From IMG/VR virus record IMGVR_UViG_3300025012_000026, positions 1-64,000 of that record: 64,000 bases of DNA; one strand, written 5' to 3'. Under the pieces are notes generated by a model. That model was not told the DNA's origin, made no database searches, and worked only from the letters and a program-made list of their open reading frames with translations. Shown piece after piece: positions 3,292 through 32,929 of the stretch. Position 1 is the first letter of the stretch. Every line of letters starts with the position of its first letter. The translations under genes and the position numbers were made by a program.

Positions 3292-3306
3292 AAGGAGGAG
3301 ATCAAT

Positions 3307-4989
3307 ATTAGTCTAAATAAACAAATTCATATCTATAGTGTTGATACCAGTAGTTTTTATAATGATAAAGAAATGATTATACATAAACGTTTGAATAAAA
3401 ACTATTATCTTAGAAACAAATTAATAAAAAAGATAAGTAAATTAAAATCTGATTCAAAATATATTGGTATTCTGGAGAAGTTTATACAGAATACCAATAT
3501 GAGATTAAAAAAATATAAAAATTCTTTATATGATGAATTCAAATTAAATAGTGGTATTAGAAATTTACGTAGAGATGCGTTAAATAAATACAATGTAATT
3601 TCTGTTTTTGATTCAGTTCTTACAAGAACAATACAGATTCCAGAAAATACATTAACTGCTGATATTATTATTGTTCAAACATATTTCTTTGATGTAATTG
3701 AAGACATAATACTTGATGATTTTATGTTCGGAAATGAAAAATATGTATGTTTAACTGCCAGTGCAGGACAAATAAGAACAAAAAAGACAGTTTTTATTAA
3801 GGAAAGTATTTTATTAGAATATAGGAATACATTAATGTGCGGATTAACAATTGAAGATATTAATGTATTAGGTGGAGTAAATATTAATAAATACTTAGCT
3901 TACTTAGCCTTAGCAAATTCAGCGACAGATGTATGGAAAGAATTTGATATTACAAAATCAATTGTTGTGGAAGATATGGAAACAGAAGTAGAAGGTGTTG
4001 TCGATTTTATAAATGATATAACATATGAAATTATTAGACAAAAAATGAAAATCCCAGTTTCTCATACAGATGGATGTGGAATGATGTTACCAAGTTTAAG
4101 TGATAAAAGCATGATGGTTAGATTACCGTGGATAAAGGGATTGCTAGTCCCATTTGCATTTGATAAATTCATTATTGAAGCAAATAAAAATGAGGAAGGT
4201 AAAATATATGGCAATATATTCGATATTTATGGAAAAGAACACGATATTATAAAAGAAGGAATAGAGGTAATTTTTACACGTAGTCAATTCAAAATGTATA
4301 AATATTATCAAAATAGCCATAATGAGCAAGAAGTAATTACTAAGTATGGATGGGATGTTTATAAAGACAATTATTTAAAATATAAGTGCCAAGCTGGGAA
4401 ATGTAATGAAGAAGAAATTGATTTTAGTGACGCAAAAATAAATTATCAGATGCTTCAGACATTAACAGATATGGATAATAAAGAATTAGAAATAATTGCG
4501 AAAACTACTAAACATAATATACTGAACATCGGTAGAGATAGAAAGACAATGTTAAAGGTATTGGGGGTAAAAAAATCAAATAAAAATAAAAACAATATTC
4601 AGCAAGCATTAGAGATTTATCCTGAATTGTTGAATGATACATACAGTAAAGAAATATTAAAACAAGTTAAAAAAAGCATGGTTAAAGAAGGTAGGTCTGC
4701 AAAATTAGATATAAATGGAGTATATACATTCATTATTCCAGATATTTATGCCTTTTGTGAATTTTTAATTCTTGGAGATAAAAATCCAAAAGGATTACTT
4801 AATGATGGAGACGTGTATTGTAAATTATATGAAACTTATCCTAAGTTAGATTGCTTGCGAAGCCCACATTTGTATAGAGAACATGCAATTAGAAACAATG
4901 TAATTGATGATAAAAAGAAAGACTGGTTTATAACTAATGGAGTATACACATCTTGTCATGATCTAATATCCAAAATTTTACAATTCGAT
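3307..4989 (+). CDS. yonO: YonO-like single-subunit RNA polymerase (RdRp-like two-barrel fold), exon 1
   Basis: Frame open from 3292; GGAGG 3294-3298 with ATT 3307 restores the N-terminal LNKQIHIYSVDT; motifs SAGQIRTKK, HTDGCGM, LRSPHLYREH; ends KILQFD. Confidence 0.85.
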
Positions 4990-6069
4990 AGACATTACAT
5001 GTCGAATCAAAACTTGGCTAACCTATAAAAATAGGGTGTCATATAACATCGGAAAAAATAGTTATATGGCTAACGGGGAAATCGTAGTGAGTAATGTCAC
5101 CGACAATCCCGTAGGAAAATCGGTCTATTCTTTTAAACCTTTAGAGGGGGTTTGAAAGGCTATAAATAATTTTTACATTTATGAGTGGTATAATGTTGAT
5201 ACGGGATATGTGTTTTATGTTGGTAAGGGATGTGGAAAAAGATATAAATTGTCTACAAAGTCAGTCAGAAGTAAACACTTTCTGAATTATAAAAATAAAT
5301 ATAATTGCGATGTTAGAATAACCCATTCTAATTTAAAAGAAGAGGAATCTTTTAAATTAGAAAAAGATACAATTGAAAAATATAAAAGTAATAATCAATG
5401 TAATTGCAATTATACGAATGGTGGTGAAGGTATTAGTGGATACATACACTCACAAGAAACAAAAATAAAAATATCAGAAACCCATAAAGGAGAACTAAAT
5501 AGTCAATTTGGAGTATCCCCAAAAGAAAGGATGGGAGATAATTATGAAGATTGGTTAATTAAAATGAGTGAAGTAAAAATGGGTTCTTCCAATCCTAATT
5601 ATAATAATGATACATTAAAAATAAAATATAAGGAAAACCCAGATTTAGCTTTAGAGAAACAATCAAGAAAAGGCATTAAAAATGGAATGTCAACAAAAAT
5701 ACAATTATATGATCAGAATATGAATTTTTTAAAAGAATTTGATTATATAGGTTTATGTTGTGAATACCTACATAATAATTATGGATTTTCAAGTAATGCG
5801 GAAATTGTAAGACTTGGTATTAGAAGAAGTATTAAAAACGATGTTCCATATAAGAATTTTAAGTTTATTAAATTATAAAATAATATTAAAAGAATAGACC
5901 GATAACCTCTAACGACTATCGAAAGGATAGGAAATTGAAAAATATTTCCGAATAACCGAGTAGAGTAGAGATTATGTGAAAATCATAACTCGAAACGCCA
6001 AGCATAATAATACTGTAATGTATTATTATGAAGATATAGTCTGTGCCATATAAAAGTATGGATTACGCG
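4990..6069 (+). ncRNA. group I intron (1080 nt) in the yonO catalytic motif
   Basis: 5' exon ends in U, P1 TTCGAT/GTCGAA with U.G pair; P7 GACTAT 5914-5919 with ATAGTC 6036-6041; terminal G6069; splicing gives in-frame QFD-VDGD. Confidence 0.92.
5162..5878 (+). CDS. intron-encoded GIY-YIG homing endonuclease (NUMOD3-like repeats)
   Basis: FYIYEW...FYVGKG, R and E-rich helix, NYTNGGEG, HSQETKIKIS; frame open from 5156, so the start is probably ATA 5162, upstream of track start 5210; ORF enclosed by a perfect 15 bp stem 5119-5133/5889-5903. Confidence 0.85.
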   Translation: MNNFYIYEWYNVDTGYVFYVGKGCGKRYKLSTKSVRSKHFLNYKNKYNCDVRITHSNLKEEESFKLEKDTIEKYKSNNQCNCNYTNGGEGISGYIHSQETKIKISETHKGELNSQFGVSPKERMGDNYEDWLIKMSEVKMGSSNPNYNNDTLKIKYKENPDLALEKQSRKGIKNGMSTKIQLYDQNMNFLKEFDYIGLCCEYLHNNYGFSSNAEIVRLGIRRSIKNDVPYKNFKFIKL

Positions 6070-7005
6070 GTAGATGGAGATAAATCTTTAGTTGTTGCTT
6101 GTCCTACATTAATTTCAATTGCAGAACGTAATATGAAAGATATAGTTCCACTTTATTATAATATGAGAAAAGCACCAGCAGAATTAATTACTAAAAAAAG
6201 TATTTATAATGGTTTAAAAATGGCATATACTGGTGGAAACATTGGAATGGGTAGTAATAATATTACAAAGATATGGAATAGTGGTAAAGTAAATTTAGAT
6301 GTAATTAAATTACTATGTATGGAAAACAATTTTACAATTGATTATGCTAAAACTTTGTATAAACCAGTAAGACCAAAGTCTAAAAAGAATATGATTACTG
6401 ATTATACTAAATTAAAGACCCCTCATTTTTTTATTTATGCTAAAGATAAAGAGAAAGATAAGGTTGAATTAGTTAACAATAGCGTTGTAAATAGATTAGA
6501 GAAGATAATTCCAAATACTAAAATTAGTTTTACTGCTACAGGATTAGGAAATTTTGATTATAAAATGCTTATGAGAAATAAAAAAGTGGAGTTAAACGAA
6601 GATATTATAAAAAAATATAAGGAGTTAGATTTAAAAAAGCATTTTATGATAAATTCTACATATGAGGAAGATGAACAAAACAATGTGATTTATTTATATC
6701 AAGAAATTGTAAAAAGCATACTAGAAATAAATAGTGATGTTTATTATGTAACAGATGTGTTAGTAAAATATCTGTATGAATTTAAGAAGTCAAACTTTAA
6801 AACTACTTTATGGGAGTGCTTTGGGGATATTATTGTTGATAATCTGAAAACAAATGTGGAAACTAGTAAAATATATTGTGAAGTTTGTGGTGATTTAATA
6901 GTACAAGAAAACAATAAATCTAAGTATTGTGAAAAGTGTGCAAAAGACATAAAAATGAAGAAGGATAGGGAGAGGATGCAAAAAAATAGAAATAGTCGAA
7001 AATAG
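6070..7005 (+). CDS. yonO: YonO-like RNA polymerase, exon 2 (spliced product ~872 aa)
   Basis: Begins VDGDKSLVV, completing DxDGD; C-terminal CxxC-CxxC zinc ribbon. Confidence 0.88.
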   Translation, partial: VDGDKSLVVACPTLISIAERNMKDIVPLYYNMRKAPAELITKKSIYNGLKMAYTGGNIGMGSNNITKIWNSGKVNLDVIKLLCMENNFTIDYAKTLYKPVRPKSKKNMITDYTKLKTPHFFIYAKDKEKDKVELVNNSVVNRLEKIIPNTKISFTATGLGNFDYKMLMRNKKVELNEDIIKKYKELDLKKHFMINSTYEEDEQNNVIYLYQEIVKSILEINSDVYYVTDVLVKYLYEFKKSNFKTTLWECFGDIIVDNLKTNVETSKIYCEVCGDLIVQENNKSKYCEKCAKDIKMKKDRERMQKNRNSRK

Positions 7006-7700
7006 AAAACCTCTACAACCCTACTCCCACAAGGGTTTGAAAAACAGCTATATTACTTGATTTACTCAAACGTAGTCATACCAACACTTTCAGCGTTTTG
7101 CCATAATAGTCTCTAAGGGAAACATAGACTAATATACAAAAATAAGAGATATGCAAACACCCTTTAAAGAAGGGTATGATTTTAAATTAATTATACCCTT
7201 ACGTTCATACAAAATTTAAGACCATTAATCTTTCCTTACTAACTAAATCATACACAATTGGCTATGTTAGTAGAAAACTTTGCTTAAAATTATCTATCGA
7301 GTTTTGCCAATAGGACTTGAAGATAATTTGGCATGTATTATCGAAGTAACGCTGAAATATGCACTAAAGGGTTTTAGATAATACAAAATCTCAACTAAAT
7401 CAACGTCGAATATGAGTAGTCTTTGGTCGGATGAAAATAGGAGACAAATATGCTGTTAGCACATGAAAATTTGCCAAACCCGATTTACAGAGGTGAGGAC
7501 TTGTGTTAGACCACAGCATATCGAACTAAATAGAGGGTAAAAGAGTAGGTTTTAAATTTATTACTTACTCTTCCCTACTAAATTAGTTATTAAATCGTAT
7601 TGGTCGATTGCGATTTATATAAAAAATATCTTATAATTAAAAACATAACAAAACAATTAAACTCCAAAAACAATCCCAAAAGGAGCATCAATAACATACA

Positions 7701-29967: not shown

Positions 29968-30989
29968 ATGAGTTTTGGAATAGATTTTACAAAATTACAA
30001 GAGAATGCAGAACAAGTTGAGATTAATAAGATTGTAAAGAATAAGTTGGCGAACGCATCACGTCTAAGTGAAGACGTAGAGATTTTTACAAATATTGTTT
30101 ATGGTAAAGATGTATCTAAATATGGTAAAAAAGTTGATACAGTGATGGATAAAATTAAAACTTTAGCTGGAATGGCTAATGATGGTAATACTCAGGCTAA
30201 AGCTGAGTTGAATGCTATTCGTACTATTACTATTCAGCAACCTTTGGAAAAGAGATTAGCTATTAATAGTGCTATGGGGAATGTAACAAAGGTATTGGCA
30301 AACGAGGAACTGAGGTATTCCGTTGCCCAATTACAAGGAGAGAAATCAAGAGTTCAAGCCAATTCTGGTTCTTTTGTATTCCCAACTGTTAAGAAAAGAA
30401 CTGGAACTATGACTGTTCAAAATGCAACAGGTGGTTTGATTATCGATCCAAGAGAATTAATGTCTGGTGATACAGATACGATGGCTTATGCTAATGAACA
30501 AGTATTGACTTCTATTATTAACCAAATGGTTCTTTCTCATATCAATGCTTTAAGAAGTGCTATTACTGCTGCCACCACATTGAAAAACTACAGCGAGGGG
30601 ATTACTAAGACTAATGTCGAAAATACAAGAAAATTAGCGAGACGTTTTGGTTCTTCTGTTACAATTATGGGAGACTATAGTGCAGTTAATAAGTTAAGTG
30701 ATCTTGCTAATTTTAGTGTTGTTGCTGCTGGAACAGAATTTAGATTCCCAGACTCAGTGATGGAAGAAGTAATGAAGACTGGTCTTCTTAAAGTATATAA
30801 AGGAAGTCTCGTCATAGAAATGCCTAATAGCTATAATATGATTGATCTTAATACCGCTGGAGATTTCTATGCTCCTCAATTACCTACAACTGATTTGTGG
30901 TTCTTACCACAAGGCCAAGTTAGTCCCCTTCAGATCGGAATTCAGGGTGGTTTGACTAGTATGACAGCCACAGACATTAATTTAAGGGT
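29968..30989 (+). CDS. major capsid protein (YonB-like), exon 1
   Basis: Position; AELNAIR, ARRFGSSVTIMGDY, GGLTSMTATDINLR. Confidence 0.8.
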
Positions 30990-31363
30990 AACTTTAGCCC
31001 CGTATGTACAGAAATGCGCATAGGACACTTCCTTAATTGCAGGTAATTCCTAAAGCTCTCATGCCACAACATAAGGATGAAATATGCCTAAGTGTGACGG
31101 AACGAAAGTAGAAAAAAGTTGAGAGATGGCATAAGGTTAAATCTTAAGTGCTTTTACAATGGATGTTCATTGCAGGTAAGACTCGAATAGAGTAAACTTC
31201 AACGACTATGGCTGAAATGCCAGTACACTCAAGCGAGTGGAAAATGGAAGCCCTTAACAGATAATGCTGAAGGTGAAGAAATAGTCTATTCTCATATGAA
31301 AGTATGAGCAGTTATAAACGATATAGAAGTTGCGATTCTATATGAATATAAATTTATAAAAAG
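30990..31363 (+). ncRNA. group I intron (~374 nt, no ORF) in the major capsid gene
   Basis: P1 GGGT/GCCC with U.G; TTAATTGCAGG; P7 GACTAT 31204-31209 with ATAGTC 31281-31286; exact junction ambiguous by 1 nt. Confidence 0.85.
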
Positions 31364-31461
31364 CCGAAGTTACAAGATACGATATTTCCTACGGAAACAA
31401 GGTTCTAATTGAGCTAATTCCGGCGATGGGATATATATATGATGCTGCTCTAGCTGAGTAA
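31364..31461 (+). CDS. major capsid protein, exon 2
   Basis: (A)EVTRYDISYGNKVLIELIPAMGYIYDAALAE* continues the capsid C-terminus. Confidence 0.75.
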
Positions 31462-31596: not shown

Positions 31597-32929
31597 GTGG
31601 GCAAGAAACTAAATATTGATCAGTTTAAACAATGGATGTTAGAAAATTCTGTTGATATAAAATGTATTAGTAACTATGGTGTTGATGATAAAATTGATAG
31701 TAAAACAGAACTATTATTCCAATGCAATAGAAATCATACATTCTCAAAAACAATAACTAATTTCAAAAAGAATCCTAGGTGTCCTCATTGCACTGGAAAG
31801 TGTAAATATACATTTGAAGATGCTAAAAGGATAGTCGAAGCAGTAGAAGGTTATTTATTAATATCGACTGAATATGTCAGATGTAAAGATTATTTAATTA
31901 TTCAATGTGATAAAGGTCATCCCTTCCCAATGACATTTACAGCTTTTAATGTCGGAGGACACAGGTGTCCTATTTGTAACACAGGAGGGAAATATAAGTA
32001 TGATTTAGAAATTGCAAAAGAAATTTTTAAATTAGAAAAGTGCGAACTGTTAGTAGACGAATATATAGATTGCGATACATACATACATGCCTTATATGTG
32101 TTCATGTGGTAATCCAAGCAAAATTTCTTTAATAGAATTTATCAGAGGTCATAGATGCAAAATTTGTGGTAATAAGAAAACTGGTGACGGTTTAAGAACG
32201 CCATACATAGAAACATATAATTATTTTAAAGATAATGGTTGTGAATTATTATCCACAGAAGACGAAATACAGAATAATAAAACAAAAGTAAGATATATTT
32301 GTTCTTGTGGAAACCCAGATGAAGTATTGGTTGAAAAGTTTAAAGTTGGCGAAAGATGCAACAACTGTAAACAAGAAAGAACTGAGGCAACATTTTTAGA
32401 CAGATATGGTTTCAAGTATGCATTATCAAGTCCAGAAATAAGAGAAAAAATTAGACAAACTCTTTATAAAAATGGATCAGCACCATGTAGTAAACAACAG
32501 GAATATATACACAATCTAATTGGTGGAGAACTTAATTATCCTGTAAAAACATCTTCTTTGGACATTGCTTTCCTAGAAGAAATGATTTATTTAGAGTACG
32601 ATGGCGGTGGACATAAGAATAGTATTTTGTATGGCACTGTTACAGAAGCAGAGTTTATAAAAAGAGAAAGAAATAGAACTTATGGGCTACTACGTTCTGG
32701 TTGGAAAGAAATTAGAATCATTAGTGAAAAAGATGACCTAATCCCATCAGACCAAAAGCTTCTAGAAATCCTATCCTACGCACGTAAATATCTAAATCAA
32801 AATCATCATTACATAAAATTTGACATTGACAATTCAAAAATAATTAATTCTCAAGGTGAATTTGACTATGATTTTGGCGAACTAAGAAAAATCAAACCAA
32901 CAGATATTCAAATCCAAGAAGCAATATAA
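31597..32929 (+). pseudogene. zinc-finger/Vsr-like (EDxHD-type) homing endonuclease, frameshifted
   Basis: Two overlapping ORFs 31597-32112 and 32087-32929; removing one ATAC unit of (ATAC)3 at 32075-32086 fuses them; C-terminal LDIAF...LEYDGGGH. Confidence 0.75.

What the first reader, a model, noticed from the sequence alone, without database searches (positions are those of the whole stretch)
3307..7005. Group I intron with homing endonuclease inserted inside the DxDGD active site of a YonO-type phage RNA polymerase
Seen: exon 1 ends CAA TTC GAT (QFD, U4989) and exon 2 starts GTA GAT GGA GAT (VDGD, 6070), rebuilding D-V-D-G-D. P1 with the U.G pair, P7 and terminal G are all present. Established: SPbeta YonO is a single-subunit RNA polymerase needed for late transcription, and mobile introns favour conserved catalytic motifs. 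Inference: late gene expression of this phage depends on self-splicing, and the unspliced mRNA would give a catalytically dead 574 aa product. I do not recall an intron reported in this polymerase family.
Basis: partly seen in the sequence, partly recalled or inferred. Interest (0 to 1): 0.7.

Follow-up and report, generated by a model that had tools for sequence, protein, structure and literature searches.

The report
Self-splicing intron splitting a phage RNA polymerase
A 1,080-base mobile group I intron that carries its own DNA-cutting enzyme sits exactly inside the metal-binding catalytic motif of this groundwater phage's YonO-type RNA polymerase gene, so the phage can make a working polymerase only if the RNA splices itself; the kind of element is well known, but its presence in this gene family is not in the papers I could search.

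Summary
Window 4990-6069 is a 1,080-nt insertion between the first Asp codon and the next codon of the DxDGD motif of a YonO-family polymerase gene (3307-7005). Removing it gives an open 872-aa frame, 53% identical to SPbeta YonO, with the junction at YonO D535. Contigs from other groundwater samples carry the same gene without the insertion (4989 joined to 6073 through GTG). Twelve related introns in yonO genes, nine at the same site and three 5 nt upstream, show compensatory changes in P1, P2, P3, P4, P6, P7.1, P7.2 and P8. All 13 have a U.G pair at the 5' splice site and a terminal G; P7 is invariant. A covariance model of the family finds all three T4 introns, both SPbeta introns and the Twort orf142 introns. 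Rfam's own model stays below its threshold. The P6 loop encodes an I-TevI-like GIY-YIG endonuclease under purifying selection, without a canonical start codon. Splicing was not observed: no RNA data hold this phage. It is a new member of a known kind. Cultured phages Goe11 and Goe14 carry an unremarked group I intron at another yonO site.

The parts
3307..4989 (+). yonO exon 1: 561 codons from an ATT start, ending in the first Asp of DxDGD
   Evidence: tblastn gives 54% identity to SPbeta YonO up to the last residue. Pfam RdRP PF05183 scores 37.6 bits against a cut-off of 23.8. The ATT start and N-terminal extension are conserved in homologues.
4990..6069 (+). Group I (IA-type) intron, 1,080 nt
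   Evidence: An exact intron-less allele exists in runs X5 and X6. Related introns show covariation across the structure. The family model R1 scores 122 bits here and finds the known T4, SPbeta and Twort introns.
4983..5007 (+). P1: exon ATTCGAT (4983-4989) paired with the internal guide GTCGAAT (5001-5007), with U4989.G5001 at the splice site
   Evidence: Read. The U.G pair is present in 13 of 13 introns, and 4 of 7 pairs show two-sided changes.
5013..5017 (+). P3 5' strand, CTTGG; it pairs with 5998-6002
   Evidence: Seven different complementary versions occur across relatives (CTCGG/CCGAG, CTTCG/CGAAG, TTGGG/CCCAA and others).
5022..5068 (+). Two hairpins between P3 and J3/4 (5022-5035 and 5040-5068); I did not match them to a named element
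   Evidence: Compensatory changes occur in 4 of 5 and 5 of 7 pairs.
5073..5112 (+). P4 (ACGGG 5073-5077 with CCCGT 5108-5112) enclosing P5
   Evidence: ACGGG/CCCGT alternates with ACAGG/CCTGT in relatives; 100% of cells are canonical pairs.
5119..5903 (+). P6 stem (5119-5136 with 5886-5903) whose loop holds the endonuclease ORF
   Evidence: An 18-bp perfect complement. In relatives the stem differs in sequence but stays complementary.
5156..5878 (+). Homing endonuclease frame, 240 codons stop to stop: GIY-YIG domain, NUMOD3 motif, C-terminal DNA-binding domain. The first canonical start (GTG 5210) lies inside the catalytic domain.
   Evidence: NUMOD3 E 1e-8. The AlphaFold2 model has pLDDT 89. 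I-TevI catalytic domain matches at Z 9.4 over model residues 4-89, and the I-HmuI and I-TevI DNA-binding domains match at Z 7.4 and 5.2. dN/dS is 0.12 against the L180 copy.
5914..6041 (+). P7 (GACTAT 5914-5919 with ATAGTC 6036-6041) enclosing P7.1 (5930-5949), P7.2 (5957-5992), the P3 3' strand (5998-6002), P8 (6003-6030) and J8/7 AAGATAT
   Evidence: P7 is invariant in 32 of 32 family members, and P7.1, P7.2 and P8 covary. Rfam Intron_gpI gives a partial match at 5940-6062, 27.3 bits.
6045..6069 (+). P9 hairpin and the terminal G (6069)
   Evidence: Read. All 13 introns whose ends were set by exon homology end in G.
6070..7005 (+). yonO exon 2: VDGD... 311 codons plus the stop
   Evidence: It continues the alignment to YonO homologues without a gap across the junction.

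Best explanation
Window 3307-7005 is the gene of a single-subunit, two-barrel RNA polymerase of the YonO family. It is interrupted by a mobile group I intron of the phage IA type, the same family as T4 td, SPbeta bnrdE/F and Twort orf142. The intron (4990-6069) lies between the first Asp codon and the following codon of the Mg-binding DxDGD motif. After transcription the intron RNA should fold into the P1-P9 core and excise itself in two guanosine-initiated transesterifications. That joins U4989 to G6070 and restores an 872-aa frame with D-V-D-G-D intact. Unspliced mRNA would yield a 573-aa fragment with only one of the three aspartates. The P6 loop encodes an I-TevI-like endonuclease: a GIY-YIG nuclease domain, a NUMOD3 linker and a C-terminal DNA-binding domain. 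By analogy this enzyme cuts intron-less yonO alleles of co-infecting relatives, so that repair copies the intron in together with flanking exon sequence. Shown here: the anatomy, the exact boundaries, a conserved and covarying RNA structure, kinship to proven self-splicing introns, the existence of an intron-less allele, and purifying selection on the endonuclease. Inferred: actual splicing, endonuclease activity, and the role of the polymerase in late transcription.
For: The intron-less allele in other samples joins 4989 to 6073 through GTG. Exon identity: 53% identity to SPbeta YonO over 831 positions, with the junction Asp aligned to YonO D535 of DNDGD. There are single gapless tblastn alignments across the junction to uninterrupted homologues and a Pfam RdRP hit. 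RNA: 13 introns from diverged yonO genes give P1, P2, P3, P4, P6, P7.1, P7.2 and P8 with 95-100% canonical pairs and two-sided changes in every helix; U.G is present in 13 of 13. P7 is invariant and P7.1, P7.2 and P8 covary in 32 family members. There is a partial Rfam Intron_gpI match that includes AUGAAGAUAUAGUCU. Model R1 finds exactly the three T4 introns, both SPbeta introns and three hits in the Twort orf142 region. Mobility: the same intron and endonuclease occur in phage G001. There the intron core is 89-93% and the ORF 83% identical in nucleotides, against about 70% (about 60% in amino acids) for the exons. Differences from the intron-less allele cluster within about 270 nt upstream and 80 nt downstream of the site. 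The intron-bearing form stands at 54-62x depth in its source sample and in five independent IMG/VR assemblies.
Against: No RNA evidence exists: the only metatranscriptomes of the site are tiny and hold nothing of this phage. Rfam's Intron_gpI model does not reach its gathering score. It gave nothing on the whole window or on 4850-6200, and 27.3 against 50 bits on the 3' part alone. The window's intron lacks the P2 hairpin that the other 11 introns have; only it and its G001 copy lack it. The endonuclease frame has no ATG, GTG or TTG ahead of its catalytic domain. The upstream ATG (5066) used by 269-aa relatives is cut off by TGA 5153. Pfam GIY-YIG, PHROGs and PDB sequence searches did not recognise the nuclease domain.
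Confidence: 0.9

Rival explanations
1. The ribozyme or the endonuclease has decayed. The insertion would then be a dead intron and yonO a pseudogene in this phage, or the intron would splice but no longer move.
For: The P2 hairpin is missing. The endonuclease has no canonical start and an in-frame stop separates it from the ATG that relatives use. An ORF-less relative, L080, shows that endonuclease loss does occur in this family.
Against: All core helices and the J8/7-P7 consensus are intact. The phage is abundant and assembled identically five times. The endonuclease frame has no internal stop over 240 codons, and dN/dS is 0.12 against a copy that carries a stop (TAA) at the same place. That pattern points to expression from a near-cognate start such as ATA 5162. 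No second RNA polymerase gene was found that could replace YonO.
Confidence: 0.07
2. This is a split gene without splicing. The N- and C-terminal parts of YonO would be made as two proteins, with a free-standing endonuclease gene between them.
For: GenBank annotates the similar case in Goe11 and Goe14 as two genes, yonO_1 and yonO_2. The ORF listing offers GTG 6043 as a start for the second piece.
Against: The break falls inside a five-residue catalytic motif. The flanking non-coding parts form a conserved, covarying group I structure. Removing exactly 1,080 nt restores the frame and matches a natural allele. GTG 6043 lies inside P9 of the intron, and its 9 extra codons are not conserved.
Confidence: 0.02
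3. The insertion is an assembly artefact or chimera.
For: The window comes from a metagenome assembly.
Against: The same arrangement occurs in five IMG/VR contigs and in Logan contigs of four runs, with continuous overlapping pieces across both junctions. Diverged copies lie at the same site in other phages.
Confidence: 0.01

Closest known systems
T4 td intron with I-TevI (group IA, GIY-YIG endonuclease in the P6 loop)
   Same: Both are group IA introns with P7.1 and P7.2, and both carry the endonuclease ORF in the P6 loop. The enzyme architecture matches: a GIY-YIG domain (Z 9.4 to PDB 1LN0), a NUMOD3-type linker and a C-terminal DNA-binding domain. Both are inserted in a conserved part of an essential enzyme gene. 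The family model R1 hits the td intron.
   Different: The host gene is an RNA polymerase, not a nucleotide-metabolism gene. Two extra hairpins lie between P3 and J3/4, and P2 is absent. The endonuclease has no canonical start codon. There is no detectable sequence similarity to the I-TevI nuclease domain.
SPbeta bnrdE and bnrdF introns, and the Twort orf142 introns
   Same: They are phage group I introns of Gram-positive hosts with the same conserved blocks. R1 scores 38-45 bits in SPbeta and up to 79 bits in Twort. SPbeta is also the phage in which YonO was defined.
   Different: In SPbeta itself yonO is uninterrupted; its introns sit in the ribonucleotide reductase genes.
Split yonO of Bacillus phages vB_BsuS-Goe11 and Goe14 (GenBank MT601272, OL580764)
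   Same: The host gene family is the same. The insertion holds a roughly 300-aa ORF and a group I 3' core directly before the second piece (R1 39.8 bits, E 4e-8).
   Different: The site differs: about YonO residue 630/631, not DxDGD at 535-539. It is annotated only as yonO_1/yonO_2, and the papers on these phages do not mention an intron there.
Mobile introns in multisubunit RNA polymerase genes of jumbo phages (201phi2-1 gp273/274; PhiPA3 intron endonuclease that nicks the PhiKZ vRNAP gene)
   Same: A mobile intron with an endonuclease sits in a phage-encoded two-barrel RNA polymerase gene (PMC2919709; PMC12908238, section 15 and Figure 4, citing Birkholz et al. 2024).
   Different: Those are beta/beta'-like subunits of multisubunit enzymes in Pseudomonas jumbo phages. 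Here the enzyme is a single-subunit YonO-type polymerase and the site is the DxDGD motif itself. No competition effect was tested here.

Membership tests
Group I intron | Match to Rfam RF00028 (Intron_gpI) at its gathering score | tested here: not met
   There was no hit on the whole window or on 4850-6200. The 3' part alone gave 27.3 bits, E 2e-5, against a gathering score of 50. ORF-less relatives also stayed below it. The model performs poorly on this phage IA family.
Group I intron | P1 formed by the exon end and an internal guide sequence, with a U.G pair at the 5' splice site | tested here: met
   ATTCGAT pairs with GTCGAAT. U.G is present in 13 of 13 related introns. Compensatory exon/guide changes occur, for example TTTGAT/GTCAAA and ACAGT/GCTGT.
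Group I intron | Terminal G at the 3' end of the intron | tested here: met
   G6069. All 13 introns whose ends were fixed by exon homology end in G.
Group I intron | Conserved core: P3-P8 and P4-P6 domains, the P3/P7 pseudoknot, and the J8/7-P7 consensus | tested here: met
   Covariation supports P3, P4, P6 and P8. P7 GACUAU/AUAGUC is invariant in 32 of 32, and AAGAUAUAGUC is present.
Group I intron | Homology to experimentally proven self-splicing introns | tested here: met
   Model R1, built from this family, finds all three T4 introns, both SPbeta introns and three sites in Twort orf142, and nothing else in T4 and SPbeta.
Group I intron | Guanosine-dependent self-splicing | not testable with these tools
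   No RNA run holds the phage.
Subgroup IA | Extra helices P7.1 and P7.2 between P7 and the 3' strand of P3 | tested here: met
   Hairpins at 5930-5949 and 5957-5992, with two-sided changes in 7 of 8 and 7 of 7 pairs.
YonO-type single-subunit two-barrel RNA polymerase | Full-length colinear similarity to SPbeta YonO | tested here: met
   The spliced 872-aa product is 53% identical over 831 aligned positions. Exon 1 alone scores E 1e-152.
YonO-type single-subunit two-barrel RNA polymerase | DxDGD metal-binding motif | tested here: met
   It is present only after splicing: D|VDGD aligned with YonO DNDGD 535-539. The motif is described for the family in PMC2919709.
YonO-type single-subunit two-barrel RNA polymerase | DNA-dependent RNA polymerase activity and a role in late transcription | not testable with these tools
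   This is an inference from SPbeta (PMC8270828). No T7-like or Rpb1-type polymerase domain was found elsewhere in the genome.
GIY-YIG homing endonuclease (I-TevI-like) | GIY-YIG catalytic fold with its conserved Tyr, Arg, Glu and Asn | tested here: met
   The model (pLDDT 89) matches the I-TevI catalytic domain at Z 9.4, rmsd 2.5 over 83 residues, and UvrC-N at Z 7.8. R29, E69 and N85 are invariant and Y9 and Y21 nearly invariant in 32 homologues.
GIY-YIG homing endonuclease (I-TevI-like) | Sequence-profile match (Pfam PF01541 or PHROGs) | tested here: not met
   Only NUMOD3 PF07460 matched. There was no PHROG hit and no PDB sequence hit.
GIY-YIG homing endonuclease (I-TevI-like) | Complete ORF with a start codon ahead of the catalytic domain | tested here: inconclusive
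   No ATG, GTG or TTG lies between the stop at 5153 and the GIY motif, and GTG 5210 would delete the first strand. Relatives start with M three to eight residues before FYIYEW, or at an upstream ATG. A dN/dS of 0.12 argues that the frame is expressed.
GIY-YIG homing endonuclease (I-TevI-like) | Site-specific cleavage of the intron-less allele | not testable with these tools
   Only indirect signs are available: an intron-less allele coexists with the intron-bearing one in X5 and X6, and flanking differences cluster near the site.

The most novel reading that the evidence does not exclude
The yonO gene family is a previously unrecognised hotspot for group I introns. At least four insertion sites exist, two of them only 5 nt apart inside the DxDGD motif. 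The endonucleases at that motif share one DNA-binding domain but carry either a GIY-YIG or an HNH nuclease domain. In mixed infections the endonuclease could cripple the polymerase gene of intron-less competitors, as shown for PhiPA3 against PhiKZ. Splicing efficiency could also gate the onset of YonO-dependent transcription.
Probability: 0.2. Interest if true: 0.65.

Novelty: new member of a known kind. Interest (0 to 1): 0.45.

Why it matters
Mobile group I introns in conserved active-site codons of essential phage genes are textbook biology, so the mechanism is no surprise. The new part is the host gene. YonO-type polymerases are the simplest known relatives of cellular multisubunit RNA polymerases, and none of the papers I could search reports an intron in them. 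The survey shows that such introns are frequent in uncultured relatives. It also shows one in the cultured Bacillus phages Goe11 and Goe14, where it is filed as a split gene. This matters in three ways. Gene callers will report truncated or 'split' polymerases. The Goe11/Goe14 pair with SPbeta offers a tractable system for testing homing and phage-phage interference at a polymerase gene. The paired GIY-YIG and HNH enzymes with a common DNA-binding domain at one target are a natural example of nuclease-module exchange.

Tried and rejected
- **Rfam scans:** the whole window at gathering thresholds gave nothing. The intron region and its 5' part at permissive thresholds gave only chance hits. Six related loci gave no group I hit. 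The ORF-less L080 intron scored only 15.7 bits.
- **RNA evidence:** only three very small SOLiD metatranscriptomes from the same study were offered. None held the stretch and nothing could be laid on it.
- **Alternative genetic code:** I considered TGA as sense to read through the stop at 5153. I rejected it because code 11 already gives 81% coding density and TGA ends 44 long ORFs.
- **Endonuclease recognition:** a single-sequence structure prediction was useless (pLDDT 32) and was replaced by an alignment-based model. Pairwise BLAST to I-TevI showed only the NUMOD3-like stretch. PHROGs and PDB sequence searches found nothing.
- **Intein:** rejected because the insertion has stops in the host frame and a conserved RNA structure.
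- **Second intron candidate near 31.2 kb:** its splice sites could not be fixed; no pair of sites gave both an exon-terminal U and an intron-terminal G in frame.
- **Literature:** searches for an intron in yonO found none.
Full report
**Origin of the window.** The window is the first 64 kb of a 227,247-bp IMG/VR virus record from groundwater metagenomes. It has 29% G+C. The standard code applies: stop-to-stop ORFs of at least 100 codons cover 81% of the genome, and TGA ends 44 of them.

**The observation.** Exon 1 ends CAA TTC GAT at 4989 and exon 2 starts GTA GAT GGA GAT at 6070. Joining 3373-4989 to 6070-7005 gives one open frame of 850 codons reading ...ILQFD|VDGDKS.... That is an ATT codon 8 nt behind AAGGAGG, and the 22 codons that follow (ISLNKQIHIYSVDTSSFYNDKE) are conserved in homologues. 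Those homologues carry ATT, TTG or ATG at the same codon. The spliced product is therefore 872 aa. The unspliced product would stop at TAA 5026 after 573 aa.

**The host gene.**
- Exon 1 alone matches SPbeta YonO and its relatives at about 54% identity, right up to its last residue. It matches an uninterrupted 886-aa protein of Clostridium phage D-1873 at 62%.
- Pfam places it in RdRP PF05183. That is the family to which YonO-like proteins are distantly related; it shares the DxDGD motif (PMC2919709).
- In a multiple alignment the spliced protein is 53% identical to SPbeta YonO over 831 positions. The junction Asp aligns with YonO D535 of D-N-D-G-D.
- Uninterrupted homologues align across the junction in single gapless tblastn segments.
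- No T7-like or Rpb1-type polymerase domain occurs elsewhere in the genome, and the RdRP family matches only here.

**The boundaries are confirmed by nature.** Logan contigs of runs X5 and X6, from other groundwater samples, contain a 1,949-nt piece that runs from 4302 to 4989. It then reads GTG and continues at 6073 to 7330. That is the same gene without the 1,080 nt, reading F-D-V-D-G-D. Intron-bearing pieces occur in the same runs, so both alleles coexist. The differences between the two alleles are almost all at third codon positions. They crowd around the site: at least 14 in 4719-4956 and 6 in 6072-6150, against at most 3 in 4302-4718 and 11 in the remaining 1,180 nt. This is the pattern expected if the intron arrived by homing from a diverged donor and dragged flanking exon sequence along. 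I cannot exclude other causes.

**The RNA.**
- Rfam found nothing at gathering thresholds. On the 3' part alone it gave a partial Intron_gpI match (27.3 bits, E 2e-5) covering P8, AUGAAGAUAUAGUCU and P9.
- By eye the intron shows these elements (coordinates are in the parts list):
  - P1 (ATTCGAT/GTCGAAT, with U.G at the splice site);
  - P3 (CTTGG/CCAAG);
  - P4-P5;
  - a perfect 18-bp P6 that encloses the ORF;
  - P7 (GACTAT/ATAGTC);
  - P7.1, P7.2, P8 and P9;
  - a terminal G.
- To test this I surveyed YonO relatives. Of 80 IMG/VR loci most are uninterrupted. L063 and L080 have insertions at the same site, and L070 has one 5 nt upstream.
- The 19-mer AACGACTATCGAAAGGATA, shared by all four introns, occurs in 74 stretches of viral contigs. 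Among these are further yonO genes interrupted at the same place: L112, L117, L118, L121, L122, L123 and L159. L092 and L116 are interrupted at the site 5 nt upstream.
- I aligned thirteen introns trimmed of their ORFs. RNAalifold recovers P1, P2, P3, two hairpins between P3 and J3/4, P4, P6, P7.1, P7.2 and P8. The main helices have 95-100% canonical pairs, and every helix shows two-sided compensatory changes. The U.G pair is present in 13 of 13. All 13 introns end in G, although their ends were set by exon homology. The P6 strands were picked by complementarity, so that helix is biased.
- In a separate alignment of 32 family members (3' halves), P7 is invariant. P7.1, the base of P7.2 and P8 covary.
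- The window's intron and its G001 copy lack the P2 hairpin that the other eleven have.

**Kinship to proven ribozymes.** A covariance model of the 3' half (R1) scores 122 bits on the window. In T4 it finds exactly three places. They lie in the td, nrdB and nrdD introns, which the record annotates as group IA with I-TevI, I-TevIII and I-TevII. In SPbeta it finds exactly two places, in bnrdE and bnrdF, both annotated as interrupted by an intron. In Twort it finds three places in the orf142 region and others elsewhere. The P7.1 and P7.2 pair is the mark of subgroup IA. The same blocks occur in cultured Staphylococcus, Lactococcus, Enterococcus and Bacillus phages.

**The endonuclease.**
- The P6 loop holds a 240-codon frame (5156-5878).
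- Pfam sees only NUMOD3. Homologues are numerous, and one is named 'group I intron endonuclease' by its source.
- An alignment-based AlphaFold2 model (pLDDT 89) matches the I-TevI catalytic domain best (Z 9.4, residues 4-89). GIY-YIG domains of PD-T4-3 and UvrC follow. The C-terminus matches the DNA-binding parts of I-HmuI (Z 7.4) and I-TevI (Z 5.2).
- R29, E69 and N85 are invariant in 32 homologues.
- The start is odd. No ATG, GTG or TTG precedes the GIY strand, and GTG 5210 would delete that strand.
- Relatives either start three to eight residues before FYIYEW or, in the closest lineage, at an ATG inside the ribozyme core (ATGGCTAACGGGG), giving 269 aa.
- In the window that upstream frame is closed by TGA 5153. 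In a copy that is 86% identical in amino acids (L180, L181) it is closed by TAA at the same codon.
- Between these two copies dN/dS is 0.12. The frame is therefore still under selection, and a near-cognate start (ATA 5162) is my guess. The phage's yonO also appears to use ATT.

**Mobility.**
- A different phage (G001) has yonO exons that are only about 60% identical in amino acids to the window's, about 70% in nucleotides. It carries the same intron at the same site. Its core is 89-93% and its ORF 83% identical. This fits horizontal spread.
- At the same site, L063 carries an HNH endonuclease. Its last 110 residues are 40% identical to the window's enzyme (E 2e-22). One DNA-binding module thus serves two nuclease types.
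- L080 has lost the ORF but keeps its first 11 codons.

**Other sites.** R1 also hits the insertions at YonO residue 630/631 in Goe11 and Goe14, 39.8 bits, directly before 'yonO_2'. It hits the same site in L066, L067, L112, L116, L117 and L122, and one near residue 178 in L080. The papers on Goe11 and Goe14 mention no intron in yonO. No paper in the library links yonO with a group I intron or a homing endonuclease.

**What is known.** Mobile introns are known in the beta-like subunit gene of phage 201phi2-1 (PMC2919709). An intron endonuclease of PhiPA3 nicks the vRNAP gene of PhiKZ (PMC12908238).

**What is not shown.** Splicing itself, endonuclease activity and the role of this polymerase in late transcription are inferred. 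The only metatranscriptomes offered hold nothing of the phage.

**Verdict.** The finding is real and correctly read. It is a new member of a very well-known kind of element in a host gene family where it had not been described. It also brings a useful by-product: the family is rich in such introns, including in cultured phages.

Noticed in passing
window 3292-3375: yonO appears to start at ATT 3307 behind AAGGAGG. The 22 codons before the first ATG are conserved in homologues, seven of which also have ATT at that codon; others have TTG or ATG. Gene callers, and the D-1873 annotation, start further downstream.
   Followed up: partly
window 30980-31460 (R1 hit 31201-31312): A second group I intron candidate of the same family (32.9 bits, E 4e-6) lies right after ORF 29968-31023. 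That ORF's product matches an SPbeta-like structural-region protein (SPR spr_70) only up to residue 329 of 367. A frame resembling the missing C-terminus (EVTRYDISYG...) lies near 31364-31460. Splice sites are not resolved. Two ORFs downstream (31597-32112 and 32087-32929) were not examined.
   Followed up: partly
L002 and L003 5699-7003 (Bacillus phages Goe14 and Goe11): The yonO_1/yonO_2 split in these cultured SPbeta-like phages contains a roughly 300-aa ORF and a group I 3' core (R1 39.8 bits at 6858-6971). It is therefore an unannotated group I intron at YonO residue about 630/631. The same site is occupied in several metagenomic phages.
   Followed up: partly
L070 6947-7398; L092 583-1591; L116 (minus strand): A second insertion site lies 5 nt upstream of the window's, after CAGT in the Gln-Phe codons of QFDxDGD. 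Its internal guide sequence is adapted accordingly (GCTGTA). Two related intron lineages thus target the same motif at different phosphodiesters.
   Followed up: partly
window 5537-5875 versus L063 7580-8193: The endonucleases at the same yonO site share a C-terminal domain of about 110 aa (40% identity) but have different nuclease domains: GIY-YIG in the window and HNH in L063.
   Followed up: partly
L080 7075-7448: This ORF-less 374-nt intron at the same site keeps the ribosome-binding site and the first 11 codons (MTEYKYIDYFG) of the HNH endonuclease in its P6 loop. It is a snapshot of endonuclease loss.
   Followed up: no
window 5066-5164: A 29-codon frame starts at an ATG inside the ribozyme core (P3.2, J3/4, P4) and ends at TGA 5153, two codons before ATA 5162. 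In close relatives this frame runs on into the endonuclease (269 aa). A stop at the same codon (TAA) is present in the L180 and L181 copies.
   Followed up: partly
window 4719-4956 and 6072-6150: Synonymous-type differences between the intron-bearing and intron-less alleles are concentrated next to the insertion site. This looks like a co-conversion tract.
   Followed up: partly
IMG/VR contigs behind L093, L115, L119, L131, L132, L142, L152 (one 249-kb contig) and L087, L100, L102, L124 (one 254-kb contig): Single large phage contigs carry at least 9 and at least 5 copies of the same intron family's 19-mer. These genomes are heavily colonised by introns.
   Followed up: no
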